From the IMG/VR virus record IMGVR_UViG_3300020438_000007, positions 166,740-230,739 of that record: a stretch of DNA of 64,000 nucleotides. One strand, written 5' to 3'. This document shows positions 6,100 to 63,290 of this stretch, piece by piece. Within the stretch, counting starts at the first letter, position 1, and the number at the start of each line of letters is the position of its first letter. The notes beneath the pieces are model-generated. The model did no database searches. It was not told the DNA's origin and saw only the letters and a program-made list of their open reading frames with translations. The position numbers were made by a program, and so were the translations under genes.

Positions 6100-6404
6100 A
6101 CAAAGAATTGTTCTAGTGGGGTCAAGTTAAGTTTCATTGCAGTATAGGGCGAAGTGTCCTCTATTGAGACTTCTTTACCTATTCTATTTGAATTGATGGG
6201 GGCGTAGTAAGCGTGCGTACTGCTTCTCTTTGTTCTCTTATGCTTGACGAATCCCCAGATACAACGAGATTCATCACCATCATTATAGAGAAACCTATAG
6301 TCAGATACAGTCCAGATAGCATCCACATTAGTTTTAAATTGTATCGACTCATAGCGGTATCCTTTAGGTGGTTGGTGAATAAAATCGTCTGGAAGTGCGG
6401 TCAC
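6096..6404 (-). CDS. conserved cyanophage hypothetical protein
   Basis: 102-aa ORF; F.H..P.GY.YE...CIWGF...YAPINS...TxPYTAM pattern. Confidence 0.75.
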   Translation of the reverse strand: MTALPDDFIHQPPKGYRYESIQFKTNVDAIWTVSDYRFLYNDGDESRCIWGFVKHKRTKRSSTHAYYAPINSNRIGKEVSIEDTSPYTAMKLNLTPLEQFFV

Positions 6405-6490
6405 AATTTATCAGTTAAAAGATTGTGGGAGAGATTCGACTTAAAGAGCATTTTCCACTGGGGTCGCTCACTCTTGCCTCCCACATTTAT

Positions 6491-22500: not shown

Positions 22501-25500
22501 ACTTACCGTTTGCAGATATACCAGTACCAAACAGTCTGTTGGAAACTAGTGAGTATGATGTATCAATACCAGCAGTGATGATACCAACGTTGAAAGTAAT
22601 ACTTCTAAGTGGTAAACCATCCTCTACACCTTGAACAACTAACTTCCTATCATCAAATAGTGGGTTTCCAGTTCCTTGAATAACAAATGCGTTACCAGCC
22701 ACAAGTGCGTGGTTGTCATCTGTTCTGAGTGTTGAAATTCCTGTCTCTTTAGAGACATCAATATAAGTAACACCAACACCAATGTTTGCTAAGTGATATG
22801 TTGGAACTCTTCTATCGTCTCTATCTGTGAAGTATGGGTCAAGATTTCTCGAAGTTCCAATCTCAACAGAAATAGACTTGGATGAAGGAACATCAACAAT
22901 TTTAAATGTACCGTTTAACTTAGGATCTTCAAAACCAGAGAGGTTCAATCCATCTCCTATATTTGTGAAGATAGATGTAACTGACACCACACCAGCGACA
23001 CTAGGAGCGCCAGCAGGGAATGAAGATACAGTCATGGTATTACCGATACCATATCCACAACCACCATCTAATAGTGATGCACCAGTAATAGTACCAGCAG
23101 CTGAGACTGTGATTTTAGCAGAAGCATTTCTACCAATCAGAGCAGAGTTCTCAAGGTCTGCAGCGTAGATTACAGTTGAAATACCTGATCCATTGTTGTA
23201 TCCAGCGCCAGGATTAACAACACTCAAACCCTTAACAGAGTTGAAGTTATGTTCAACTTCGGTGAATAGAGTAACAGTTGTATTACCTGTACCAGTAATT
23301 ATCGCGCCAGTAGCAGCAAAACCTACCTGTTGCCCCTGCATGAAGTACCCAAGAGACTCTTTGGTGATAGATCTCTTCTTATCACTAGTGATAACTTCAC
23401 CAATAACTGCGGCACTAGCATGAGTGATAGTGGGTTCTGGATCAGACTCGTAGTTGTCTCTATCTTGTTGTGGATATAGATTTCTTACGTCTTGTTGGAA
23501 AGACTTAGTAGATACACCAAATCCAAGATCCTTATCAAGTGGAATAGATGCACAAACCATAGTGATGTTGTACACACCGTCTTGTCCAGATGTGCCAGGT
23601 ACATGAGGTTTGTTCTCTTGTACTCTGTAAACTGTGAAACTATCAACTGCCTTTGATCTTTGAACTGTAGGTAGCGATTCAATCTGTTGTTGAGTAGTTC
23701 TCTGGTTTACCTGATTAAGGAACAGGCCTGGATCTGTACTGATACCAGTGACAGTGAACTTCTTAGTTGAAATAACATTATCAACACCAAACTCACCATT
23801 ATATCCTAACTTGAATGTTCCTAGACTATTGTTGACACTATCAATGTTCCTGATAGTAACAGTGTCTCCTTTCTGTAGTCTATGTGGTTCTTCAGTTGTA
23901 AATGAAATAGTCTGAGCATTATAAGTTGCCGTCTTAACAATTTTGACGTTCTTAAGTTGAGTTGGATTACTTAAGTCTGCACTCAAGAATGATGCACTAC
24001 TTACACCAACTGTCTTAGACTCTTGTAGAATGAAACCAGGCTTAGGAGCACGAGCATTGATATGTTCTTTTGGAATAACATATCTAATTCTATAGAGTCT
24101 GTCGAGTAGAGATCTATTATCAACTCTTCTCTTGAGGAATGTAGTTCCTGTTTCCTCTCCAATCACACCAACACCGATAGTATTGATAGCAGAGAAGATA
24201 GTATTATCAGCAGTGCTTGAAGAACCAGTTAGATACCAACCACCAACTGTGTTAGGAATACTATTAATGGTATAAGTACTCTCATCAAACTGCATTGGGT
24301 GGCCTGGATCGCCAGGATTCTTGTCCGATACAGTAGATCTTATTCTTAACTTACCACCACCATTAGAAATACCAGTAATAGGTCGTCTAGAAGCAGCATC
24401 GTTAAATGTAGATGCTAACTGAATTCTGTCTGCAGCGAGTGTACCACCAGAGATTGCAAAGTAAATCTTATCATTGAAGATACCACTTGGAGTTTCACCA
24501 GTATTACTGAATACTCTGACTTTCTCACCATTTACAAGTTGATGAGCGGTCTTGAACTGGAATACGTTAGAAATAATGGCGTTGACACCAGAGTTTCTAA
24601 TAACCTCATACTCTTTGAATCCAGAAGTTCCGATACCACTAGGAACTTGCATAAAGACAGGAGACTGATAAGTCTCTTGTACTGCCTGTCCAGATAGAGT
24701 ATTAACTAAACTTAGGAATAGTGTATCGTTATTTCTTGCACCAACTTTGAATGAATCAATCTCTGCTGGAGGAACAATCTCTTGGTTGTTATAACCAAAC
24801 AGATAGAATCTATCAGTTACACCAACACCAATGGTTTTTCTAGTATCAATGGTCAACCAAGATACAGTAGAGTCCTCTCTTGTAATCTCTCTTGGTGGAA
24901 TGACGTGAGTGATATAACCAACATCATCTCTGTCGAATGAGTCTGGACGGAAACCTGTAGACTCAAGAGCAGTTTGTCCAAAGTTGGAGTTAGAGTTGGT
25001 AATTGATGCGTCACCGCCTCGTTCTGCATGGAAGTGACGAGCATACGCAATAGCGAACACAGAAACCAACTGAATAACAGAGTTATTCCTAGTCCTCATG
25101 TGAGAGGTTTCAAAATTTGGTTTGTATATCGCCCTTGAGTTAGAGTGTAGTGGTTTATCTGACTCTGATACTGTAGTAGTATCGTTGAATATTGCAGTTG
25201 TAGGGTTGTAAAGTATGAAAGCGTTGTCGTCTTTCTGAATTGAGATACCAGTGAACTGAGCACAAACCATAGATTTGAAACCAGTTGCCTTGTCACCATC
25301 ACAATCCAATCCGTTCATACCGAACACTGATCGGAGTGATACGTTAAAGATGTATGGAGAAGCAGATCCAACAGTATCAGACTCAACTACAATACTAGAG
25401 TTCTGAATTTCTTGTGCAGTTGGTAGTGCATTACTAGGAACATTTGGTGTCTGAACTGTGAACTGAGTACTACTTGAAACTTCATCTACAAGGAACGAAC

Positions 25501-26494
25501 CATTGTAGGAGTTGATTGCAGTTGTAATACCAGCAATTAAAACAGGAGTATCTTTAAATAGTCCATGTGCCTTGTTAGTCTCAATGGTCAGAGTTGCCGT
25601 TGGTGTATTACCATCACCCGCTCTGATAGATGTAACACCAACTGGATCTGCTTGTAAATCACCAACAATTCTAAATTCATCAACACTTGGTTCAAAATCA
25701 TCAAATGTAGGATAGTTTCCAACTGGTCTACCAGATGAGTCTCCGTATGCCTTTGCAACCTTGAAGTAGAACATATCAAGGTCTGTCAATGTACTATCTG
25801 TACCATCGATCAAGACGTTGTTTACACCATCAGCATAAGTAAATGTTGCTAACTTGTGGTGTGAATATGAAGGAGTTTTTCTGTTACTATCATAGTCATA
25901 GTATGCAGTCTTGGTGATATCTGCATCAAAAATAGTGAATGCCGTAAAGTAACAAGTACCAGTAACTCTAAGAACACCACCATATTCCATATCATCATTC
26001 AGAGGATCTGGAACATAAAGAGGTCTAAGTTTGGTTTTACGAAGATCCAAACCAATGATAGATGTACCACGAGGCATGATAGCACCACCTTCGGTACTAT
26101 TATACTTGTACAGTTCGTTATTAGGATCTAAAACATCAAAGTTTGTTTCAGTTGTAAACTGTTCTAATGAAGTTACTTCATATCCAGCGTTCTTTCTGCA
26201 CTTAAATTCTGCGTTGCCACCATTATTTGTGACAGTAAATCCAGGCCTGTTATCAATGTAGTGTACGCCAGGATATGCTAAGATAGTTGTTCTGTCTATC
26301 TTATCGTTATTTTTACCAACCTGATATGAAAATCTTGCAGCCTCAATCAGTGCCCTCTGAATCGTCTTGAAGGGTCTTGTCTGAGAGTTACCTCGGTTTT
26401 CAATACTATCAGTAGCGTCAAAGTCACTTGGGTTTACATAGAGTATATTACCCTCAGCGTTCTTTAGAAAGTTTTCTAATCTTGATAGAGGCAT
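19511..26494 (-). CDS. giant tail fibre / virion structural protein with C-terminal peptidase S74 intramolecular chaperone
   Basis: 2327 aa; MPLSRLENFL...RPFKTIQRALIE N-terminus; GIGVT/GIST repeats; ASDMRLKQN...YEKLVPVLIEAIKEL (S74); late promoter CTAAATA 26527-26533. Confidence 0.9.
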   Translation of the reverse strand: MPLSRLENFLKNAEGNILYVNPSDFDATDSIENRGNSQTRPFKTIQRALIEAARFSYQVGKNNDKIDRTTILAYPGVHYIDNRPGFTVTNNGGNAEFKCRKNAGYEVTSLEQFTTETNFDVLDPNNELYKYNSTEGGAIMPRGTSIIGLDLRKTKLRPLYVPDPLNDDMEYGGVLRVTGTCYFTAFTIFDADITKTAYYDYDSNRKTPSYSHHKLATFTYADGVNNVLIDGTDSTLTDLDMFYFKVAKAYGDSSGRPVGNYPTFDDFEPSVDEFRIVGDLQADPVGVTSIRAGDGNTPTATLTIETNKAHGLFKDTPVLIAGITTAINSYNGSFLVDEVSSSTQFTVQTPNVPSNALPTAQEIQNSSIVVESDTVGSASPYIFNVSLRSVFGMNGLDCDGDKATGFKSMVCAQFTGISIQKDDNAFILYNPTTAIFNDTTTVSESDKPLHSNSRAIYKPNFETSHMRTRNNSVIQLVSVFAIAYARHFHAERGGDASITNSNSNFGQTALESTGFRPDSFDRDDVGYITHVIPPREITREDSTVSWLTIDTRKTIGVGVTDRFYLFGYNNQEIVPPAEIDSFKVGARNNDTLFLSLVNTLSGQAVQETYQSPVFMQVPSGIGTSGFKEYEVIRNSGVNAIISNVFQFKTAHQLVNGEKVRVFSNTGETPSGIFNDKIYFAISGGTLAADRIQLASTFNDAASRRPITGISNGGGKLRIRSTVSDKNPGDPGHPMQFDESTYTINSIPNTVGGWYLTGSSSTADNTIFSAINTIGVGVIGEETGTTFLKRRVDNRSLLDRLYRIRYVIPKEHINARAPKPGFILQESKTVGVSSASFLSADLSNPTQLKNVKIVKTATYNAQTISFTTEEPHRLQKGDTVTIRNIDSVNNSLGTFKLGYNGEFGVDNVISTKKFTVTGISTDPGLFLNQVNQRTTQQQIESLPTVQRSKAVDSFTVYRVQENKPHVPGTSGQDGVYNITMVCASIPLDKDLGFGVSTKSFQQDVRNLYPQQDRDNYESDPEPTITHASAAVIGEVITSDKKRSITKESLGYFMQGQQVGFAATGAIITGTGNTTVTLFTEVEHNFNSVKGLSVVNPGAGYNNGSGISTVIYAADLENSALIGRNASAKITVSAAGTITGASLLDGGCGYGIGNTMTVSSFPAGAPSVAGVVSVTSIFTNIGDGLNLSGFEDPKLNGTFKIVDVPSSKSISVEIGTSRNLDPYFTDRDDRRVPTYHLANIGVGVTYIDVSKETGISTLRTDDNHALVAGNAFVIQGTGNPLFDDRKLVVQGVEDGLPLRSITFNVGIITAGIDTSYSLVSNRLFGTGISANGKSLSAGENNLAGRSSYFYTGISTTINAPLTSTDTTITLSSTEGFRRGDYCMINGEVVRFTSDNINNILRGQFGTLASSAITGTTIKKIKVLAMELRRPSILRASGHTFEYLGYGSGNYSTSLPQKQDRVLSDQETLSAQKKELDGGTVVYTGMNDSGDFFTGYKKLSSITGEEEVLEAPVFTYVGDDAEAETIKRASGVFDEVLIRESLTVEGGDNNNRTSQFYGPVNMTEKLTNTSADGIETVNLSLRGDAPQGKVFTVGISTPLTAARSGDISFVGVPNAGGYLGHIFAEGEWRRFGAVSQERDRSFYRFDQIGIGQSGVGIFNFKDSFEVNGVAKIKDLFVSGIVTFAANQSFAGVSYDTLVIKKNANFWGYNTTGGISYDGIPWEQHGFYTQVHEAGTSRLYNAEFVGTYVTFKPASAIHIEGPYKSTFSGVSTITGTLEVGNLECEGGTFNGTFVNAINAGIDTLSVKKDLYATAGIITDLNVTVGVVTNGLYADIGITTLSHVGTQYVNENRVFTGITTNLEVTNSATIANETVTNATITNLIVPNTGSADIEIANIDQLTSTDITFTDDLIGPDAYFSNDVDSDGMLTRYIGSKYGPNPGVESEQLTIFANAGLYTCITGFAMTMARINMSPGGDGLAAPKITADVGIITALSAGGNSNMSIDAGPAGQIKSFQFESIATNVPPIKTSSTIKCVNLNADLLDGLSMIDSNWTSGASIMGRDSNGSTKVKDITATGIFQGGAGAFPDGITGADATITGSSSINNLTVTGTFTAAGGFAGNADTATVASNIAIGANRVPYNTSSNNTTSSSNFTFDGTTLSVSALSASSISGNITGNAASASQVNIGGASGSKNVILGGSSGNQSLQADGGLTFNASSNNLSVGGDITAFASDMRLKQNLEQIEGAVAKVCELRGFTYEFNETGRELRLPKGRHLGVSAQEVEKVFPEAVVKRENDNYLTVKYEKLVPVLIEAIKELKDEIESLKTGGYGKS

Positions 26495-26551
26495 CGCACC
26501 AACAACCTATAAAATTTCTTCTAACCTATTTAGACAGGATCAAATGACTAT

Positions 26552-27256
26552 CTATAAAAATATGGCCTGTGTTATCCTATCTACGTCAGTAAATTTACCC
26601 GTATTCATGATTGGAGATTGTAATATGTCAGCAGGAATGATTATTGCCCTATTAAATTTCATACCAAAAGTAAACTCCCTACCCCAAGTAAATTTAGAGT
26701 CATAAACATCTTTAATAATATCAAAATGTTTTTTAGTGGCATACATTGCCTTCATATCTTCAACTACTGAAGTCCTTCCAGCAAAATTCCATAGGTTTGT
26801 TCCACCAAAACATTCTTCCTCATGGTTTAAATATATCTCTATCTTAAATTGGAAAGGCGATGGGTTATGTTCATACCATAGTTGAAAAGGTATGAGTCGA
26901 TCTGGTTGATCTGTCATTGTCTTTTCATTTAGATACTCTACAAGAAACCACATGTATGACATATTTTCGTCAATCGTTGGTCTATCGCATGTTCTGCCCC
27001 AATGTTCATCGTCATGACATATCTGTTTGATCACATGTTCTATATTTTTCCTTAGTTCATCTGTTTGATATGCAGCTCTTTCTATTCCATTAGGGTGATT
27101 ACTAAATGGAATATCTTTTTTTCTATCCAACTTTAAAGCTAATCTTCTAACTTCCTCTGGATTTTCATAAAAATTATCTATGACCATAGCACTCCTACCA
27201 TCTATGCCTATGTCTGTGATGGCAGTAGCTTCTAAATTTTCACTTAATTCAAACAT
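26552..27256 (-). CDS. DUF6445-like protein apparently lacking Fe ligands
   Basis: VIDNFYENP...IYLN..GGTNLW...FNRAIII; HxD and distal His positions not conserved. Confidence 0.7.
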   Translation of the reverse strand: MFELSENLEATAITDIGIDGRSAMVIDNFYENPEEVRRLALKLDRKKDIPFSNHPNGIERAAYQTDELRKNIEHVIKQICHDDEHWGRTCDRPTIDENMSYMWFLVEYLNEKTMTDQPDRLIPFQLWYEHNPSPFQFKIEIYLNHEEECFGGTNLWNFAGRTSVVEDMKAMYATKKHFDIIKDVYDSKFTWGREFTFGMKFNRAIIIPADILQSPIMNTGKFTDVDRITQAIFL

Positions 27257-27437
27257 CTTTGTTCTTTTCTTCCACTAAATGTTCAACTTCTGAGGCAACC
27301 TTACCCATTACCTCTCTTACATCAGTTCCTGATCCAGAGGTATAATAGTAATCTGTTCCTTTCGGAGCATAATGTCTGGTGTGGAGTGTCCAATGCCACT
27401 GTTCAATATTTTTTGAATACCAGAATTGTAATCTCAT
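27249..27437 (-). CDS. hypothetical protein
   Basis: 62-aa ORF; TATAAAT late-type motif at 27448-27454. Confidence 0.65.
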   Translation of the reverse strand: MRLQFWYSKNIEQWHWTLHTRHYAPKGTDYYYTSGSGTDVREVMGKVASEVEHLVEEKNKDV

Positions 27438-27459
27438 GAGTGTTTTAATTTATATAGGA

Positions 27460-27750
27460 GGGGGCAGAGCCCCCACAGTCACTTGGTTAACAAGGAGTGA
27501 CTAATCCCCGATTGCCCCTTAAGCAGCGACGAGTTCGTCAGTGCGGGCAAATTCTCTTGTAAGAATACGAGAGAACGCTACGATGTTATTCGCAGCAGTG
27601 TCAGATGTTTTTGCATCTATGGTTTGCTCTCCGAGCAGGTTTTCAGTCATGTTCCGTATACCCTGTCGAGACCATGGCATCCCCTTGAATGGAGATGAGG
27701 GGAATCGAACCCCTGTCCAGAATGTCGATTACACCACCTACATGTCTTTT
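27460..27750 (-). ncRNA. ssrA: permuted two-piece tmRNA (cyanobacterial type), tag ANNIVAFSRILTREFARTDELVAA*
   Basis: Acceptor piece T-arm AGGGG-TTCGATT-CCCCT + CATCTCC-A (27690-27697); 5-nt spacer TTCAA; 5' strand GGGGATG (27684-27678) giving G3:U70; tag ORF 27593..27519; terminal hairpin GGGGGC-TCT-GCCCCC 27460-27474; 5' boundary approximate. Confidence 0.93.
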
Positions 27751-27767
27751 TGAGTCATACATCAGGA

Positions 27768-28355
27768 CTATACAATCCATTGTATCCAAGAATATCTGGT
27801 TCCTTTTGTTACTGGCATTACTTCATGTGGAAACAAATACAGTGCTGGAAATACTAACACACTTCCCTTCTTTATATTGACAGTGTGTTCCTTCCAAAAC
27901 CTAAACTCACCTCCTTCAAAATCGTCATTCAACACACCTACCACACTAGTAACAGGTATGCCTCTAAATTGTCCTTCAAAGAAATCTCGGATATGATCGT
28001 AGTGTGGACTAAGATAATCGCCAACATCATACTTATTGAATTTTATGCCTGAGCAAGCTTCCCAAAATGAACCGCCAGTTTGATTATCCTCAACGTCATA
28101 ATAATTATATTTTTCGTGGAAGGCATTAAACAACTCATCATTTATATGTGGTTGTATTATATTTACCGCCTCTGGGGCAGTTACGGTTGATTTCATATTT
28201 GATTCTTTATCAATATCAACCTGTTCAAAGTCCTGATACCAAGAAAATTCACCCCATTCACGAGAATCTAAAAGAGATACTATCTGATCACATTCCTGAT
28301 CAGATAGCAAATCATACTCAAATATGTGGTCTTTAAGATTCGGATACTTCAACAT
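27768..28355 (-). CDS. prolyl-4-hydroxylase-like 2OG-Fe(II) oxygenase
   Basis: KYDVGDYLSPHYD...LNDDFEGG...FPA.YLFPHEV.PVTKGTRYS. Confidence 0.9.
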   Translation of the reverse strand: MLKYPNLKDHIFEYDLLSDQECDQIVSLLDSREWGEFSWYQDFEQVDIDKESNMKSTVTAPEAVNIIQPHINDELFNAFHEKYNYYDVEDNQTGGSFWEACSGIKFNKYDVGDYLSPHYDHIRDFFEGQFRGIPVTSVVGVLNDDFEGGEFRFWKEHTVNIKKGSVLVFPALYLFPHEVMPVTKGTRYSWIQWIV

Positions 28356-28563
28356 CTTTCATAGTAGGTTTCTGTTTCAAAACCTCATTGCCAGTTTGTT
28401 TGGAGATAAATGCAGAGAGTTCTGGAGTTTCCTCCCACTCCCAGACTTGATTATTCTGTGGGTTTTTCTTTTGAATCGTGAGTGTGCGTTTTGCCAATTT
28501 CAACCTCTCTAGATAAAACTTCGATTTCATTTTCAAGGCCAATGATCCGAAGTTCTGCATCAT
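28333..28563 (-). CDS. hypothetical protein (WEWEETPEL motif)
   Basis: ORF track; start uncertain because of overlap with 28451..28753. Confidence 0.45.
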   Translation of the reverse strand: MMQNFGSLALKMKSKFYLERLKLAKRTLTIQKKNPQNNQVWEWEETPELSAFISKQTGNEVLKQKPTMKDVEVSES

Positions 28564-28753
28564 TGGCCGATCTTTCTAGAGCCCGTACAGCAGTAGAGAG
28601 TCTTGCGATCTCTGCTCCAAAGGCATCAATATTTTGTAGAAGTAAGTTGTTTCCAAATGTCTGAGGATTCCCCTTCTCCGCATAGGCAGTGTCCTGTACT
28701 TCCTCGCATCTCTTGAGATAATCCTCTTTTGACATTCTATTGTTGTCAGTCAT
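28451..28753 (-). CDS. coiled-coil hypothetical protein
   Basis: 100-aa ORF. Confidence 0.7.
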   Translation of the reverse strand: MTDNNRMSKEDYLKRCEEVQDTAYAEKGNPQTFGNNLLLQNIDAFGAEIARLSTAVRALERSANDAELRIIGLENEIEVLSREVEIGKTHTHDSKEKPTE

Positions 28754-29274
28754 GAGTATTCCATGTAAATGTTTCCAGATATTGTAGTTCCCTCATTGCC
28801 GGAATTAACCATGTGCATGAGGAATGATGGGAATATGATGATACTCCCAGGCTCCAGAATAGGTTTATAGTCTAACGGAAACTGGGGCAAAGTGCAACCA
28901 AAATGGTTCTGAATGTTATGAATCGAAGGATTAAAAAATGCAGTTCTTGATGTCACGTCAACATATATCACATAACTCCATTGACTTTTAGGATGTATGT
29001 GAGCATCTTGATAATCATGTTTCTTATAAACATTTCTCCATATATGTCCAAACCTTGCGTTCTTTCCCATCAGTTCTGCTGGATAGAGATTTCTCTCTAT
29101 TATACCAGACAAATAAACCCAAATTTCCTGTGGAATTTCTTCTTGTTTCTGTGACGAGAAAGTAGATGAAACTCCAGAATCCCAAGTAGGTTCTAAGGGA
29201 GAGAGGGGAATACAATCAAATTTAGTTACATCAACCTGATCTTCAAAGACAGGTATTCCAAAAAGTTGTTTCAT
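28750..29274 (-). CDS. putative 2OG-Fe(II) oxygenase, TIGR02466-like
   Basis: WRNVY..HDYQDAHIHP...WSYVIY...FPSFLMHMV. Confidence 0.85.
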   Translation of the reverse strand: MKQLFGIPVFEDQVDVTKFDCIPLSPLEPTWDSGVSSTFSSQKQEEIPQEIWVYLSGIIERNLYPAELMGKNARFGHIWRNVYKKHDYQDAHIHPKSQWSYVIYVDVTSRTAFFNPSIHNIQNHFGCTLPQFPLDYKPILEPGSIIIFPSFLMHMVNSGNEGTTISGNIYMEYS

Positions 29275-29654
29275 TAATGCAAATCATCTAATTTCTGTAA
29301 ATCGCTTTGTTCTAATACTTTTTCATAACCGTTTACGGCGGCATCTATAATTGCATTTCTCATATCATCATTTTCCCTCTCTTCTAATCGTTTCTTGATA
29401 CTATCAAAGTAAATTGAAGTTTCGGAAGGTAATCCCTGTTGCCCTGGCAATTTACCCTCGTAACTACCTGTGGATTTGACATCTATTATCTCAGGTGGCA
29501 ATGGTTTGGGTGCTTCTATCCGTTTATATGTAAATCCATCACCCTCATGTAATTCCAGAGTGGTAATGGCATATTGTTCGTGACTACAATCACAATACTT
29601 CTGTCCTATACTATCATAAACAGTCCAGAATGGGTAAAAATGATCAGGAATCAT
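29274..29654 (-). CDS. conserved cyanophage hypothetical protein
   Basis: 126-aa ORF; G.KYCDC.(H/W)E..A pattern. Confidence 0.7.
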   Translation of the reverse strand: MIPDHFYPFWTVYDSIGQKYCDCSHEQYAITTLELHEGDGFTYKRIEAPKPLPPEIIDVKSTGSYEGKLPGQQGLPSETSIYFDSIKKRLEERENDDMRNAIIDAAVNGYEKVLEQSDLQKLDDLH

Positions 29655-31285
29655 AATTCATATCCAAACTCTGCCCAGTCAAAATCTTCTATTGACAATG
29701 CGTTTTCTTCTTGTGTTTTTTGTCTGGAATTAGTGTATCCTAATGCCTGCATATAACCCCAAGCCCTAGTTTCATCTTCATCCCTCAAATACCTCATAGC
29801 TTTAGCTCCATTTATATAGTAGTTTATTTTGGGTACGTTTTTGTTGATCAATTCATTCATTTCTTGTGTCTTGACCACGATTGCGTTATCGTAAGTTCCA
29901 CAATCGCCTGGTATAGATAGGCCTGGAGGAACGTTAGCATATCCGATAGTGCTACTACCAGCATCAGTTCCACCCACACCAATCATAATTCTCTGTCCTT
30001 CTGTCGCATAGAATGAATCTGAAGTTCCGTCTCCGTCATCTGTACTGAAGGTAGGCCAATTAAAATTACCAACATAATATCCAGCTCTACCATTACCAAC
30101 AAGAGGTTCATCTTCTTGTCTAACTTGTCTCCATTGTGAAGTGGTATTAGGATCACCATTATTAATCAAATCTAATTGGTGTCCTTTTCCTATATTTACA
30201 TTTTGAGCGATACCAATCTCAACTGGGTCGATTGGATTCTTTGTTGATTCAAACTCGATATCTGATGTATTGCCTGGTCTTACAACTATTACCGAACTGT
30301 TTATACCAGCTTGAGAAGGCGGTTGACTCAAGTGTGCAAAATAATAATCAGATACAATACCGATATAGAATGAAGTTCCTATATCTTTGTTAACTGTTAT
30401 ACTGACGGCATTATTCAATTCAAACACATTGAGAATCATTTCTGCAGCGGATGTAATACCTGTATTATCAACGTATGTTATAATACCTACAGCAGTTGAA
30501 ATACCTGTGATACTGGTTCCAGCTGAAACCATCCCTCCTCCACTTTTGCCTGTATCACCAAATACAAAATCTCCTACACTAAAAGCGGTGAAGATACCAG
30601 TCTTATTATCGGCATAAATTTTGTTATCACCAGATGTACAGAATCCAGATAAAGGATAAACCTCAGCGGGGTATGGTGTTAGTCCAAATCCAAGAACACT
30701 TGTAGCATTACCTGATGGAAATAAGGTTGGATTTATAAGAGCATCAGTAATAAGATCTCCTGTTTTTATACCAACCCTCCCTGTAGTAAACCCAGTAAGA
30801 GTTTCGGCATCATCGTCAAATATAATAAGAGCAGCACTACCAACATTAACGTCAACACGATTGATATTTTCAACAACATTAGCACCATACTCCATATTTC
30901 TTGGGTACTTGTAATACTTTGCTCCGTAGTATCCCAAGAACTGATATGTGGAAGCGTCTTTTTTACACTCCCATACCGTTACCTCTTCATCATCGTCATA
31001 ACCATATCTACTGAAACTACTGTCCTCTACTTGAACCCATGCCAAATCACTCCTACATCCATGAGAGATTCTCTCCAGATATGCAGTTTGAACAGCCGTT
31101 ATTGCTGTGTTGATGGGATCAATGAGTGGAGGCAGTTTACCATCCATTTTATTGACTATTTCATCATACTCATCAATGAGTGCATCAGTTAATGCTAACT
31201 GTTCTGCAATGGAATCTTCTTCCTTCCTTTGTATGACAGTTTGCGCTCTGAGTCTTTTTGCAATTTCCTTTGGATTAGCAGCCAT
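29651..31285 (-). CDS. virion structural protein
   Basis: 544 aa, GIST/VGI repeats typical of cyanophage structural proteins; lies in the baseplate cluster. Confidence 0.75.
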   Translation of the reverse strand: MAANPKEIAKRLRAQTVIQRKEEDSIAEQLALTDALIDEYDEIVNKMDGKLPPLIDPINTAITAVQTAYLERISHGCRSDLAWVQVEDSSFSRYGYDDDEEVTVWECKKDASTYQFLGYYGAKYYKYPRNMEYGANVVENINRVDVNVGSAALIIFDDDAETLTGFTTGRVGIKTGDLITDALINPTLFPSGNATSVLGFGLTPYPAEVYPLSGFCTSGDNKIYADNKTGIFTAFSVGDFVFGDTGKSGGGMVSAGTSITGISTAVGIITYVDNTGITSAAEMILNVFELNNAVSITVNKDIGTSFYIGIVSDYYFAHLSQPPSQAGINSSVIVVRPGNTSDIEFESTKNPIDPVEIGIAQNVNIGKGHQLDLINNGDPNTTSQWRQVRQEDEPLVGNGRAGYYVGNFNWPTFSTDDGDGTSDSFYATEGQRIMIGVGGTDAGSSTIGYANVPPGLSIPGDCGTYDNAIVVKTQEMNELINKNVPKINYYINGAKAMRYLRDEDETRAWGYMQALGYTNSRQKTQEENALSIEDFDWAEFGYEL

Positions 31286-62977: not shown

Positions 62978-63061
62978 TGGGAGAAGAGGGACTCGAACCC
63001 TCACGACATTTCTGCCAACAGATTTTAAGTCTGGTGTGTCTACCGATTCCACCACACTCCC
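62978..63061 (-). tRNA. tRNA-Leu(UAA)
   Basis: Cloverleaf with long variable arm, loop CT-TAA-AA, GGTTCGAGTCC; CCA not encoded. Confidence 0.93.
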
Positions 63062-63064
63062 GAA

Positions 63065-63138
63065 CGACTCAAGTAGGACTCGAACCTACGACCGACTGCT
63101 TAGAAGGCAGTTGCTCTATCCATCTGAGCTATTGAGTC
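63065..63138 (-). tRNA. tRNA-Arg(UCU)
   Basis: ACTGC-CT-TCT-AA-GCAGT anticodon arm; 7-bp acceptor stem. Confidence 0.95.
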
Positions 63139-63141
63139 TGG

Positions 63142-63215
63142 AGCCACTTGTCGGACTTGAACCGACGACCTACGCATTACAAATGCGTTGCTCTATCCAG
63201 CTGAGCTAAAGTGGC
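63142..63215 (-). tRNA. tRNA-Thr(UGU)
   Basis: ACGCA-TT-TGT-AA-TGCGT anticodon arm; U73. Confidence 0.95.
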
Positions 63216-63218
63216 GAA

Positions 63219-63290
63219 TAGGACTACCGAGAATTGAACTCGGTTCACACCGTTATAAGCAGTGGGCATTAACCAATATGCGATAGTCCC
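63219..63290 (-). tRNA. tRNA-Ile(UAU)
   Basis: CACTG-CT-TAT-AA-CGGTG anticodon arm; A73; T-loop GTTCAAT. Confidence 0.88.

What the first reader, a model, noticed from the sequence alone, without database searches (positions are those of the whole stretch)
27460..27750. Phage-encoded permuted (two-piece) tmRNA
Seen: acceptor piece (T-arm, CATCTCC-A), then only a 5-nt spacer (TTCAA), then the coding piece (GGGGATG, G3:U70 Ala identity, tag ORF, 3' hairpins); CCA is not encoded and no smpB lies in the window. Established: marine Synechococcus/Prochlorococcus have permuted two-piece tmRNA, and one-piece tmRNAs occur in some large phages. Inference: host-derived ssrA kept to sustain ribosome rescue during host mRNA decay or to replace a cleaved host tmRNA. 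It sits in a fibre/oxygenase island and is hidden under two spurious ORF calls.
Basis: partly seen in the sequence, partly recalled or inferred. Interest (0 to 1): 0.8.

Follow-up and report, generated by a model that had tools for sequence, protein, structure and literature searches.

The report
Cyanophage two-piece tmRNA gene
A marine cyanophage carries its own complete, circularly permuted tmRNA (ribosome-rescue RNA) gene; it is real and under selection, belongs to an old phage-specific lineage with an unusually long tag, but such genes in this phage group were already listed in a 2022 survey.

Summary
On the minus strand at 27460-27762 lies a permuted (two-piece) tmRNA gene. ARAGORN calls it. 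Rfam cyano_tmRNA scores 109 bits (cut-off 70) and tmRNA_permuted 85.8 bits (cut-off 47).

The window is an uncultivated relative of Synechococcus phage S-SSM7, 100% identical to a 230-kb IMG/VR contig. The acceptor strand, discriminator A, 5-nt spacer, G3:U70 and absent CCA are all as described.

Twenty-nine distinct cyanophage homologues show:
- compensatory base changes in the helices;
- an invariant G3:U70;
- mostly synonymous changes in the tag core, so both RNA and tag are under selection.

Phage copies form one clade apart from 62 host sequences (99/94 support) and are at most 77.5% identical to any host. This is an old phage lineage, not a recent capture.

Phage tags carry a 7-codon N-terminal extension and variable C-terminal parts: 31 aa here against an almost invariant 16 aa in hosts.

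No smpB was found in the window, and no cyanophage appeared among the phage records listed with an SmpB match. The 5-nt spacer is not unusual, since most Prochlorococcus genomes sampled have 6.

Novelty is low. Buchholz et al. 2022 already list permuted tmRNAs in S-SSM7, S-SSM6a, S-CAM1 and S-CAM3, although the GenBank records miscall the gene as hypothetical proteins. Function during infection remains inferred.

The parts
27460..27762 (-). Whole permuted tmRNA (ssrA) gene as delimited by the Rfam cyano_tmRNA model
   Evidence: MFE z-score -3.22.
27690..27762 (-). Acceptor piece. It comprises a 5' leader (5' end not determined), the P2 5' strand 27718-27738, the T-arm 27698-27714, the acceptor 3' strand 27691-27697 and discriminator A 27690.
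   Evidence: T-arm and acceptor stem are 100% paired in 29 phage homologues.
27685..27689 (-). Intervening spacer UUCAA between the two pieces. It would be removed by RNase P cleavage at its 3' side and 3' trimming. CCA is not encoded.
27460..27684 (-). Coding piece. It begins with the 5' acceptor strand GGGGAUG 27678-27684 (G3 = 27682 pairs with U 27693). It continues with the single-stranded D-loop analogue 27666-27677 and the P2 3' strand 27645-27665.
   Evidence: the G:U pair is invariant, 29 of 29.
27625..27637 (-). Hairpin at the PK1 position (UGCUC-GGA-GAGCA). A second pseudoknot stem (GG with CC downstream) is possible but invariant.
   Evidence: The alignment is shifted here, so pair counts are weak (helix 5, 57% paired).
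27603..27618 (-). Phage-specific hairpin AGAUG/CAUCU that encloses the resume codon GCA (27612-27614).
   Evidence: 92.9% paired with two compensatory pairs (AGAUG/CAUCU versus AUCUG/CAGAU). A at -4 is conserved 29 of 29.
27519..27614 (-). Tag reading frame of 31 codons plus UAA: AKTSDTA + ANNIVAFSR + ILTREFARTDELVAA.
   Evidence: The extra codon variants at six of the nine core positions are all synonymous. Indels between variants are all multiples of three.
27552..27575 (-). Hairpin inside the tag frame, specific to the S-SSM7 group. It lies in the 8-codon insertion.
27528..27539 (-). Helix just before the stop codon (GACG/CGUC), equivalent to tmRNA helix 5.
   Evidence: 90.9% paired with three compensatory pairs.
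27460..27516 (-). 3' pseudoknot (stem 27485-27516; loop AGUCAC 27497-27502 pairs with GUGACU 27477-27482) and terminal hairpin 27460-27474.
27448..27454 (-). TATAAAT, a T4-type late-promoter-like motif. It lies 6 nt after the tmRNA and ahead of the next ORF (27249-27437).
   Evidence: Sequence motif only.
27768..28355 (-). Upstream gene, a 2OG-Fe(II) oxygenase. Its stop lies 5 nt before the tmRNA model start, so co-transcription is likely.
   Evidence: No sigma-70-like promoter on this strand.
62978..63290 (-). Phage tRNA cluster (Ile-Thr-Arg-Leu) with 0-3-nt spacers. CCA is not encoded in 3 of 4. In most other cyanophages the tmRNA sits inside such a cluster.

Best explanation
This is a functional two-piece tmRNA gene carried by a T4-like cyanomyovirus of the S-SSM7 group.

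Shown by computation:
- The gene has all the sequence and structure features of picocyanobacterial permuted tmRNA.
- Its helices and its tag frame are under purifying selection across a phage-only clade.
- The window encodes no SmpB.

Inferred mechanism:
1. The RNA is transcribed on the minus strand, probably with the upstream oxygenase gene.
2. Host RNase P cuts 5' of G27684. The 5-nt trailer is trimmed and host CCA-adding enzyme completes the acceptor piece at A27690.
3. The two pieces stay paired through the acceptor stem and the long P2 helix.
4. Host AlaRS charges the RNA through G3:U70, and host SmpB delivers it to ribosomes stalled on broken mRNAs.
5. Translation resumes at GCA 27614-27612 and appends a 31-residue tag ending in LVAA, a host-like degron end.

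The likely benefit is to keep ribosomes free, and perhaps to recycle amino acids. Host mRNA is being degraded during infection, and host ssrA transcription presumably fails.
For: - Detection: ARAGORN and two Rfam models score above their curated cut-offs.
- Phage origin: the window is 100% identical to a 230,739-bp viral contig and 85-90% identical to S-SSM7.
- Structure: 83.8% of cells are paired against 44-50% in slid controls. 28 pairs carry changes on both sides (0 of 500 shuffles reach this). G3:U70 is 29 of 29.
- Tag translated: the core ANNIV.F.R varies mostly synonymously. Tag-length differences are always whole codons.
- Resume codon: A at -4 is conserved 29 of 29, and the codon lies 10 nt after the PK1-position hairpin, against 11 nt in hosts.
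- SmpB: none in the window and no cyanophage in the categories listed for the phage-collection search.
- Processing: the phage's own tRNAs are spaced 0-3 nt apart and mostly lack encoded CCA, so this phage already relies on host processing of tightly packed tRNA-like units.
Against: - No expression, processing, charging or tagging data could be obtained.
- No promoter was found for the gene.
- The window and S-SSM7 form has the lowest Rfam score of the phage clade (109 against up to 171 bits). It has also lost the 5' hairpin kept by hosts and other phages.
- The second stem of PK1 is only 2 bp and shows no covariation.
- Most relatives' tags end in TA, TV, AV or VA rather than AA, so degron strength is uncertain.
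Confidence: 0.75

Rival explanations
1. The phage tmRNA re-routes rather than merely supplements rescue. Its lineage-specific long tag gives tagged proteins a different fate from the host tag, such as a different protease or adaptor, slower degradation, or preferential destruction of host proteins. It does so while competing with host tmRNA for SmpB.
For: Host tags are almost invariant at 16 aa. Phage tags carry a conserved 7-codon N-terminal extension and divergent C-terminal parts ending VAA, VTA, ATA, ATV, VAV or VVA. The clade is old and phage-only.
Against: Amino-acid changes in the extension track compensatory changes in an RNA hairpin. The extension may therefore be shaped by RNA structure rather than peptide function. 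The window's own tag ends in the host-like VAA. There are no protein-level data.
Confidence: 0.15
2. It is an SmpB-titrating decoy that inhibits host trans-translation, like the TLD-only tmRNA of mycobacteriophage DS6A (PMC4131195).
For: The phage encodes no SmpB, so any phage tmRNA competes for the host protein.
Against: A full tag frame is present, and its core evolves mostly by synonymous changes. The resume-codon context (A at -4) is conserved. A decoy would not need these.
Confidence: 0.05
3. It is a decaying or neutral passenger, such as a relic of an integration site or of imprecise excision, and the small ORFs annotated over it in S-SSM7 are the real genes.
For: GenBank and RefSeq annotate hypothetical proteins here. 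The S-SSM7 group has the lowest model score and has lost the 5' hairpin.
Against: The gene is complete. There is covariation across 29 variants, including within the S-SSM7 group. The annotated CDS SSSM7_025 is the tag frame run upstream through the tRNA-like domain. T4-like lytic phages do not integrate (established knowledge).
Confidence: 0.05

Closest known systems
Two-piece (permuted) tmRNA of marine Synechococcus, Prochlorococcus and Cyanobium (Rfam RF01851)
   Same: Same gene order (acceptor piece, short spacer, coding piece), T-arm, G3:U70, discriminator A, no encoded CCA, P2 helix, PK1-position hairpin, tag core ANNIV.FSR, helix before the stop, 3' pseudoknot and terminal hairpin.
   Different: The tag is 31 aa against 16 aa, through a 7-codon N-terminal extension plus an 8-codon internal insertion. 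A new hairpin encloses the resume codon. The 5' hairpin is lost. Identity to the nearest host is only 65.5%. The gene sits in a phage without smpB.
tmRNA of Synechococcus phages S-SSM7 and S-SSM6a, listed as 'Permuted' in Table S1 of Buchholz et al. 2022 (PMC9004378)
   Same: Orthologous gene at the same locus, between the fibre gene and the 2OG-Fe(II) oxygenases. About 90% identical. Same tag apart from T3S and A30T.
   Different: Different genome (an uncultivated viral contig). The tag ends VAA instead of VTA. The published listing gives no anatomy, tag or phylogenetic analysis.
Other cyanophage tmRNAs: S-CAM1, S-CAM3, Sf-FS3, AG-345-P14 and about 40 IMG/VR contigs
   Same: Same phage clade, same N-terminal tag extension, same resume-codon hairpin.
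   Different: Those genes lie inside tRNA arrays, directly after tRNA-Thr or before tRNA-Arg. Some keep the 5' hairpin or have a promoter-like TATA element, and their tags are shorter (21-29 aa).
Alphaproteobacterial-type two-piece tmRNA of pelagiphage HTVC008M and methylophage Melnitz (PMC9004378)
   Same: A permuted tmRNA carried by a marine T4-like myophage that matches the tmRNA type of its host lineage.
   Different: A different permuted lineage (alpha type). Melnitz has an associated glutamine riboswitch. None is found within 2 kb here.
One-piece tmRNAs of mycobacteriophage Bxz1-like phages and Bacillus phage G, and the TLD-only tmRNA of DS6A (PMC4131195)
   Same: Phage-borne ssrA without smpB.
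   Different: Those are not permuted. DS6A lacks a tag frame and acts as an inhibitor.

Membership tests
tmRNA, permuted cyanobacterial type (Rfam RF01851, RF04321) | Scores above the curated gathering threshold of the covariance model | tested here: met
   109 bits against 70, and 85.8 bits against 47.
tmRNA, permuted cyanobacterial type | tRNA-like domain: T-arm, 7-bp acceptor stem, G3:U70 alanine identity pair, discriminator A | tested here: met
   The G:U pair is invariant in 29 of 29 phage homologues. Acceptor stem and T-arm are 100% paired, with compensatory changes.
tmRNA, permuted cyanobacterial type | Circular permutation: the 3' acceptor strand lies upstream of the 5' acceptor strand, separated by an intervening segment | tested here: met
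   CAUCUCC-A, UUCAA, GGGGAUG at 27697-27678. ARAGORN flags it as permuted.
tmRNA, permuted cyanobacterial type | Tag reading frame opening with an Ala codon in the conserved upstream context and ending in a hydrophobic, Ala-rich C-terminus | tested here: met
   GCA preceded by A at -4 (29 of 29). The tag ends LVAA. The core shows mostly synonymous variation.
tmRNA, permuted cyanobacterial type | Pseudoknots flanking the tag frame | tested here: inconclusive
   The 3' pseudoknot is present, with some compensatory pairs, but the alignment is shifted (helices 9 and 10). For PK1 the hairpin is present, but the second stem is only GG/CC and invariant.
tmRNA, permuted cyanobacterial type | Processing into two base-paired RNAs, CCA addition, alanylation, SmpB binding and trans-translation | not testable with these tools
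Needs bench work.
Self-sufficient tmRNA-SmpB system | smpB encoded in the same genome | tested here: not met
   No SmpB-like frame in the window or in any fetched phage locus. tblastn of E. coli SmpB against 50,697 phage records gave 68 records, and no cyanophage appeared in the categories listed. Only 64 kb of about 230 kb of this genome was seen.
TLD-only decoy tmRNA (mycobacteriophage DS6A type) | Lacks a tag reading frame | tested here: not met
   A 31-codon frame under purifying selection is present.
Phage-encoded tmRNA | Lies in a bona fide phage genome rather than in host DNA or a prophage border | tested here: met
   The flanks match S-SSM7 fibre, baseplate and oxygenase genes. The window is 100% identical to a 230,739-bp IMG/VR contig.

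The most novel reading that the evidence does not exclude
Cyanomyoviruses maintain a private, anciently acquired tmRNA lineage. On this reading its extended tag and structured resume site have been adapted so that the phage, not the host, decides the fate of polypeptides from stalled ribosomes. Examples would be a distinct degron or adaptor specificity, or tagging timed by the hairpin around the resume codon. The gene would then be a takeover device rather than a spare part.
Probability: 0.15. Interest if true: 0.7.

Novelty: new member of a known kind. Interest (0 to 1): 0.35.

Why it matters
Phage-borne tmRNAs are rare and none has been studied functionally in cyanophages. One survey found them in 2.3% of phage genomes (PMC9004378).

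This gene is a clean case. It is a complete trans-translation RNA kept for a long time by large T4-like cyanophages that depend on host SmpB, AlaRS, RNase P and the CCA-adding enzyme.

Because phage and host tags differ in sequence and length, mass spectrometry could tell which tmRNA rescues ribosomes during infection. That would be a direct handle on how much ribosome stalling an infection causes.

There is also a practical point. Public records of S-SSM7, S-SSM6a and most S-CAM1 and S-CAM3 records annotate this RNA as hypothetical proteins. Sf-FS3 and two S-CAM1 records leave it unannotated, and AG-345-P14 has no annotation at all. These should be corrected.

Tried and rejected
- **Read evidence.** There is no expression or processing evidence.
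- **Promoter.** No sigma-70-like site lies on the minus strand within 1 kb. A TATAGT overlapping the oxygenase stop lacks a proper -35 or TG extension, and I did not count it.
- **Riboswitch.** A permissive Rfam search of 25500-30500 found none, unlike Melnitz and AG-345-P14 as reported in PMC9004378.
- **S-CRM01.** It is listed as permuted in PMC9004378, but blastn with two different phage tmRNA queries did not find it. I could not place it.
- **Point of origin on the host tree.**
  - A quick tree with distant permuted tmRNAs as outgroups put the phage clade beside all picocyanobacteria.
  - The careful tree without them attaches it near marine Synechococcus.
  - The root is unknown, so I make no claim beyond phage monophyly.
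- **Alternative resume codon.** I considered the GCU seven codons downstream, at the base of the hairpin that corresponds to the host's resume-codon hairpin. I rejected it because A at -4 and the distance from the PK1-position hairpin are conserved only for the first GCA. In addition, L042 has deleted exactly the seven codons.
- **Spacer.** The 5-nt spacer is not a distinguishing feature, since hosts have 5-6 nt too.

Full report
**What is there**

On the minus strand of the window, ARAGORN calls a permuted tmRNA at 27428-27779 with the tag AKTSDTAANNIVAFSRILTREFARTDELVAA. Rfam's cyano_tmRNA model matches 27460-27762 end to end at 109 bits (gathering 70, E 1.4e-28). The tmRNA_permuted model matches 27519-27738 at 85.8 bits (gathering 47).

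Read 5' to 3' on that strand, the gene runs as follows:
- a short leader;
- the 5' strand of the long P2 helix (27738-27718);
- the T-arm (27714-27698);
- the 3' acceptor strand CAUCUCC (27697-27691);
- discriminator A (27690);
- a 5-nt spacer UUCAA (27689-27685);
- the 5' acceptor strand GGGGAUG (27684-27678);
- the single-stranded D-loop analogue;
- the 3' strand of P2 (27665-27645);
- a hairpin at the PK1 position;
- the tag frame (27614-27519);
- a 3' pseudoknot and a terminal hairpin ending at 27460.

G3 (27682) pairs with U (27693). CCA is not encoded. The stretch folds better than all 100 shuffles (z = -3.22).

**What genome it is**

The region is 85-90% identical to Synechococcus phage S-SSM7 and cyanophage S-SSM6a (Lipsvirus, Kyanoviridae). 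It is 100% identical over 9.6 kb to a 230,739-bp IMG/VR contig.

The neighbours are a 2327-aa fibre protein with a Peptidase_S74 chaperone domain and two 2OG-Fe(II) oxygenases. The upstream oxygenase ORF stops at 27768, five bases before the tmRNA model begins.

No sigma-70-like promoter is found on this strand, so co-transcription is the simplest reading (inference). Six bases after the terminal hairpin lies TATAAAT (27454-27448), the T4-type late-promoter motif, ahead of the next ORF.

In the S-SSM7 RefSeq record the homologous stretch is annotated as the hypothetical protein SSSM7_025. Its stop coordinate is the stop of the tag frame, so it is the tag frame extended upstream through the tRNA-like domain.

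**Relatives**

A pattern spanning the T-arm, acceptor strands and a short gap found 55 IMG/VR contigs.

In the annotated phage collection only 16 records carry the gene: S-SSM7, S-SSM6a, S-CAM1, S-CAM3, Sf-FS3 and the single-cell virus AG-345-P14. None annotates it as tmRNA. All the phage homologues tested exceed the Rfam threshold at 109-171 bits, with the S-SSM7 group lowest.

**Is it under selection?**

I aligned 29 distinct cyanophage copies and projected the window's structure onto the alignment. The pair counts were:
- 83.8% of cells form standard pairs, against 44-50% when partners are slid by 1-3 columns.
- 28 pairs show changes on both sides, a value reached by 0 of 500 shuffles.
- The acceptor stem and T-arm are 100% paired.
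- The G3:U70 pair is G:U in all 29.

In the tag, the core ANNIV.F.R carries extra codon variants at eight of nine positions. At six of them (GCG/GCA/GCU, AAU/AAC, AUC/AUU, GUA/GUU, CGU/CGC/AGG) every variant is synonymous. The other two positions vary in a few sequences.

Tag lengths of 14, 16, 21, 23, 28, 29 and 31 residues all reach the same aligned stop just after the helix-5 equivalent. Every indel is therefore a whole number of codons. Both the RNA fold and the peptide are being conserved, which argues against a relic or a decoy.

**The phage-specific tag**

Host tags are nearly invariant at 16 residues (ANKIVSFSRQTAPVAA or ANNIVRFSRQAAPVAA).

Twenty-seven of the 29 distinct phage copies insert seven codons (A-K/N-T-S-D-T-A and variants) between the resume context and the ANNIV core. 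After FSR they diverge into several C-terminal versions ending VAA, VTA, ATA, ATV, VAV or VVA. The S-SSM7 group adds eight more codons that form a hairpin. One contig (L025) keeps a host-like ...SRQATPVVA end.

I take the first GCA (27614-27612) as the resume codon, for three reasons:
- A at -4 is conserved in all 29 phage and all host sequences. This corresponds to the frame-setting A86 of E. coli tmRNA (established knowledge).
- The codon lies 10 nt after the PK1-position hairpin, against 11 nt in hosts.
- L042 has deleted exactly the seven codons, leaving the same upstream context directly on GCU-AAU-AAC.

The extension pairs with the four bases before the resume codon (AGAUG/CAUCU). This hairpin shows compensatory change (AUCUG/CAGAU, GACG/CGUC), which also explains the amino-acid differences (S-D against D-T). 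Part of the extension's sequence is thus dictated by RNA structure.

Hosts have an analogous hairpin made by codons 1-2 and 5-6, with covariation GCU...AGU against GCG...CGU.

**Origin**

In a careful maximum-likelihood tree of 29 phage and 62 host representatives, phage and host sequences fall on opposite sides of one branch. Support is ultrafast bootstrap 99 and SH-aLRT 94, and 99% of bootstrap trees agree.

The window's tmRNA is 65.5% identical to its best host match. No phage-host pair exceeds 77.5%, while the most distant host pair is 75.6% identical.

The gene is of picocyanobacterial type. It has been evolving inside cyanomyoviruses for a long time, or very fast, rather than being freshly copied from the current host. 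Where it attaches to the host tree is unresolved.

**Context in other phages**

Outside the S-SSM7 group the tmRNA usually sits within a tRNA array on the same strand. It lies directly after tRNA-Thr or just before tRNA-Arg.

Sf-FS3 has this array at the same place as the window's tmRNA, between the fibre gene and the oxygenases. In the window the tRNA cluster (Ile-Thr-Arg-Leu) lies 35 kb away at 62978-63290.

That cluster has 0-3-nt spacers, and three of its four tRNAs lack encoded CCA. The phage therefore already depends on host RNase P, 3' trimming and CCA addition for tightly packed tRNA-like units. The tmRNA's 5-nt spacer fits that pattern. The spacer is not unusual either: phage copies have 4-8 nt and most Prochlorococcus sampled have 6.

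**Partner protein**

tblastn with E. coli SmpB finds nothing in the window or in any fetched phage locus. Across 50,697 phage records it gives 68 hits, and no cyanophage appears in the categories listed. Host SmpB must be used (inference).

**Most likely mechanism**

The precursor is cut by host RNase P at G27684. The acceptor piece is trimmed to A27690 and receives CCA. The two pieces stay paired.

AlaRS charges the RNA through G3:U70, and host SmpB brings it to ribosomes stalled on truncated messages. Translation resumes at GCA and adds a 31-residue tag ending LVAA.

The benefit is probably continued ribosome rescue, and possibly amino-acid recycling, while host mRNAs are degraded and host transcription declines. 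This is also the view offered for other marine phage tmRNAs (PMC9004378). All steps after the sequence features are inferred.

**Prior knowledge**

Hudson et al. 2014 (PMC4131195) list only one-piece phage tmRNAs and the DS6A decoy.

Buchholz et al. 2022 (PMC9004378) surveyed 18,146 phage genomes and found 53 two-piece tmRNAs, 50 of them aquatic. Their Table S1 names S-SSM7, S-SSM6a, S-CAM1, S-CAM3 and S-CRM01 as 'Permuted'. Their Figure 5 states that phages share the tmRNA lineages of their hosts.

The 2025 tmRNA database paper also scanned RefSeq viruses (PMC11915505). The existence of this gene is therefore published.

I found no description of the following in the searched library:
- the phage-only clade;
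- the extended tag;
- the resume-codon hairpin;
- the link to tRNA arrays.

**Verdict**

The functional story is reasonable but untested, and novelty is low. The window holds a new member (an uncultivated S-SSM7 relative) of a known kind. The lineage-specific tag is the only feature that might repay bench work.

Noticed in passing
window 62978-63290 (-), plus upstream to about 63320: Four phage tRNA genes (Ile-UAU, Thr-UGU, Arg-UCU, Leu-UAA) are packed with 0-3-nt spacers. Two of the spacers read TTC. Only tRNA-Thr has an encoded CCA. A TGGTATAAT extended -10-like element lies about 20 nt upstream of the first tRNA.
   Followed up: partly
L001 (S-SSM7 NC_015287) 6192-6410; also the S-CAM1 and S-CAM3 GenBank records: Public records annotate hypothetical proteins over the tmRNA. 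SSSM7_025 shares its stop with the tag frame and runs upstream through the tRNA-like domain. Sf-FS3 and two S-CAM1 records leave the gene unannotated.
   Followed up: yes
L179:1487-1583 (S-CAM1) and L180:316-413 (S-CAM3): wcaG RNA motifs (Rfam RF01761, 82-84 bits) lie about 2.4-3.6 kb from the tmRNA in these phages. None is found in the window.
   Followed up: no
window 27448-27454 (-), and window-wide: TATAAAT, the T4-type late-promoter motif, occurs 10 times on the minus strand and 4 times on the plus strand. One copy lies immediately after the tmRNA, ahead of a 62-aa ORF (27249-27437).
   Followed up: partly
Host loci L057-L176 (for example L069 and L098): In picocyanobacterial tmRNAs the resume codon and codon 2 pair with codons 5-6 of the tag. 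Covariation (GCU...AGU against GCG...CGU) links the Ser/Arg difference at tag position 6 to the third base of the resume codon.
   Followed up: partly
A1 alignment, S-CAM1-like rows (S-CAM1, S-CAM3, L024, L025, L037, L042): These tmRNAs have a TATA-rich element (TATATAC, TATAAAG, TATAAT) about 7-10 nt before the first paired base. This suggests their own promoter. The S-SSM7 group lacks it.
   Followed up: no
L003, L010, L012, L036, L055, L015, L035 (IMG/VR contigs): The same DNA pattern also picked up viral contigs with unrelated short tags (such as GNDYELQMAA and ANDEVFALAA), some with encoded CCA. They are likely phage-borne permuted tmRNAs of non-cyanobacterial types.
   Followed up: no
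window 26552-27256 (-): A 234-aa ORF, annotated 'minor coat protein' in S-SSM7 RefSeq, gives only a sub-threshold match to DUF6445 (23 bits against cut-off 24). The RefSeq name looks doubtful.
   Followed up: no
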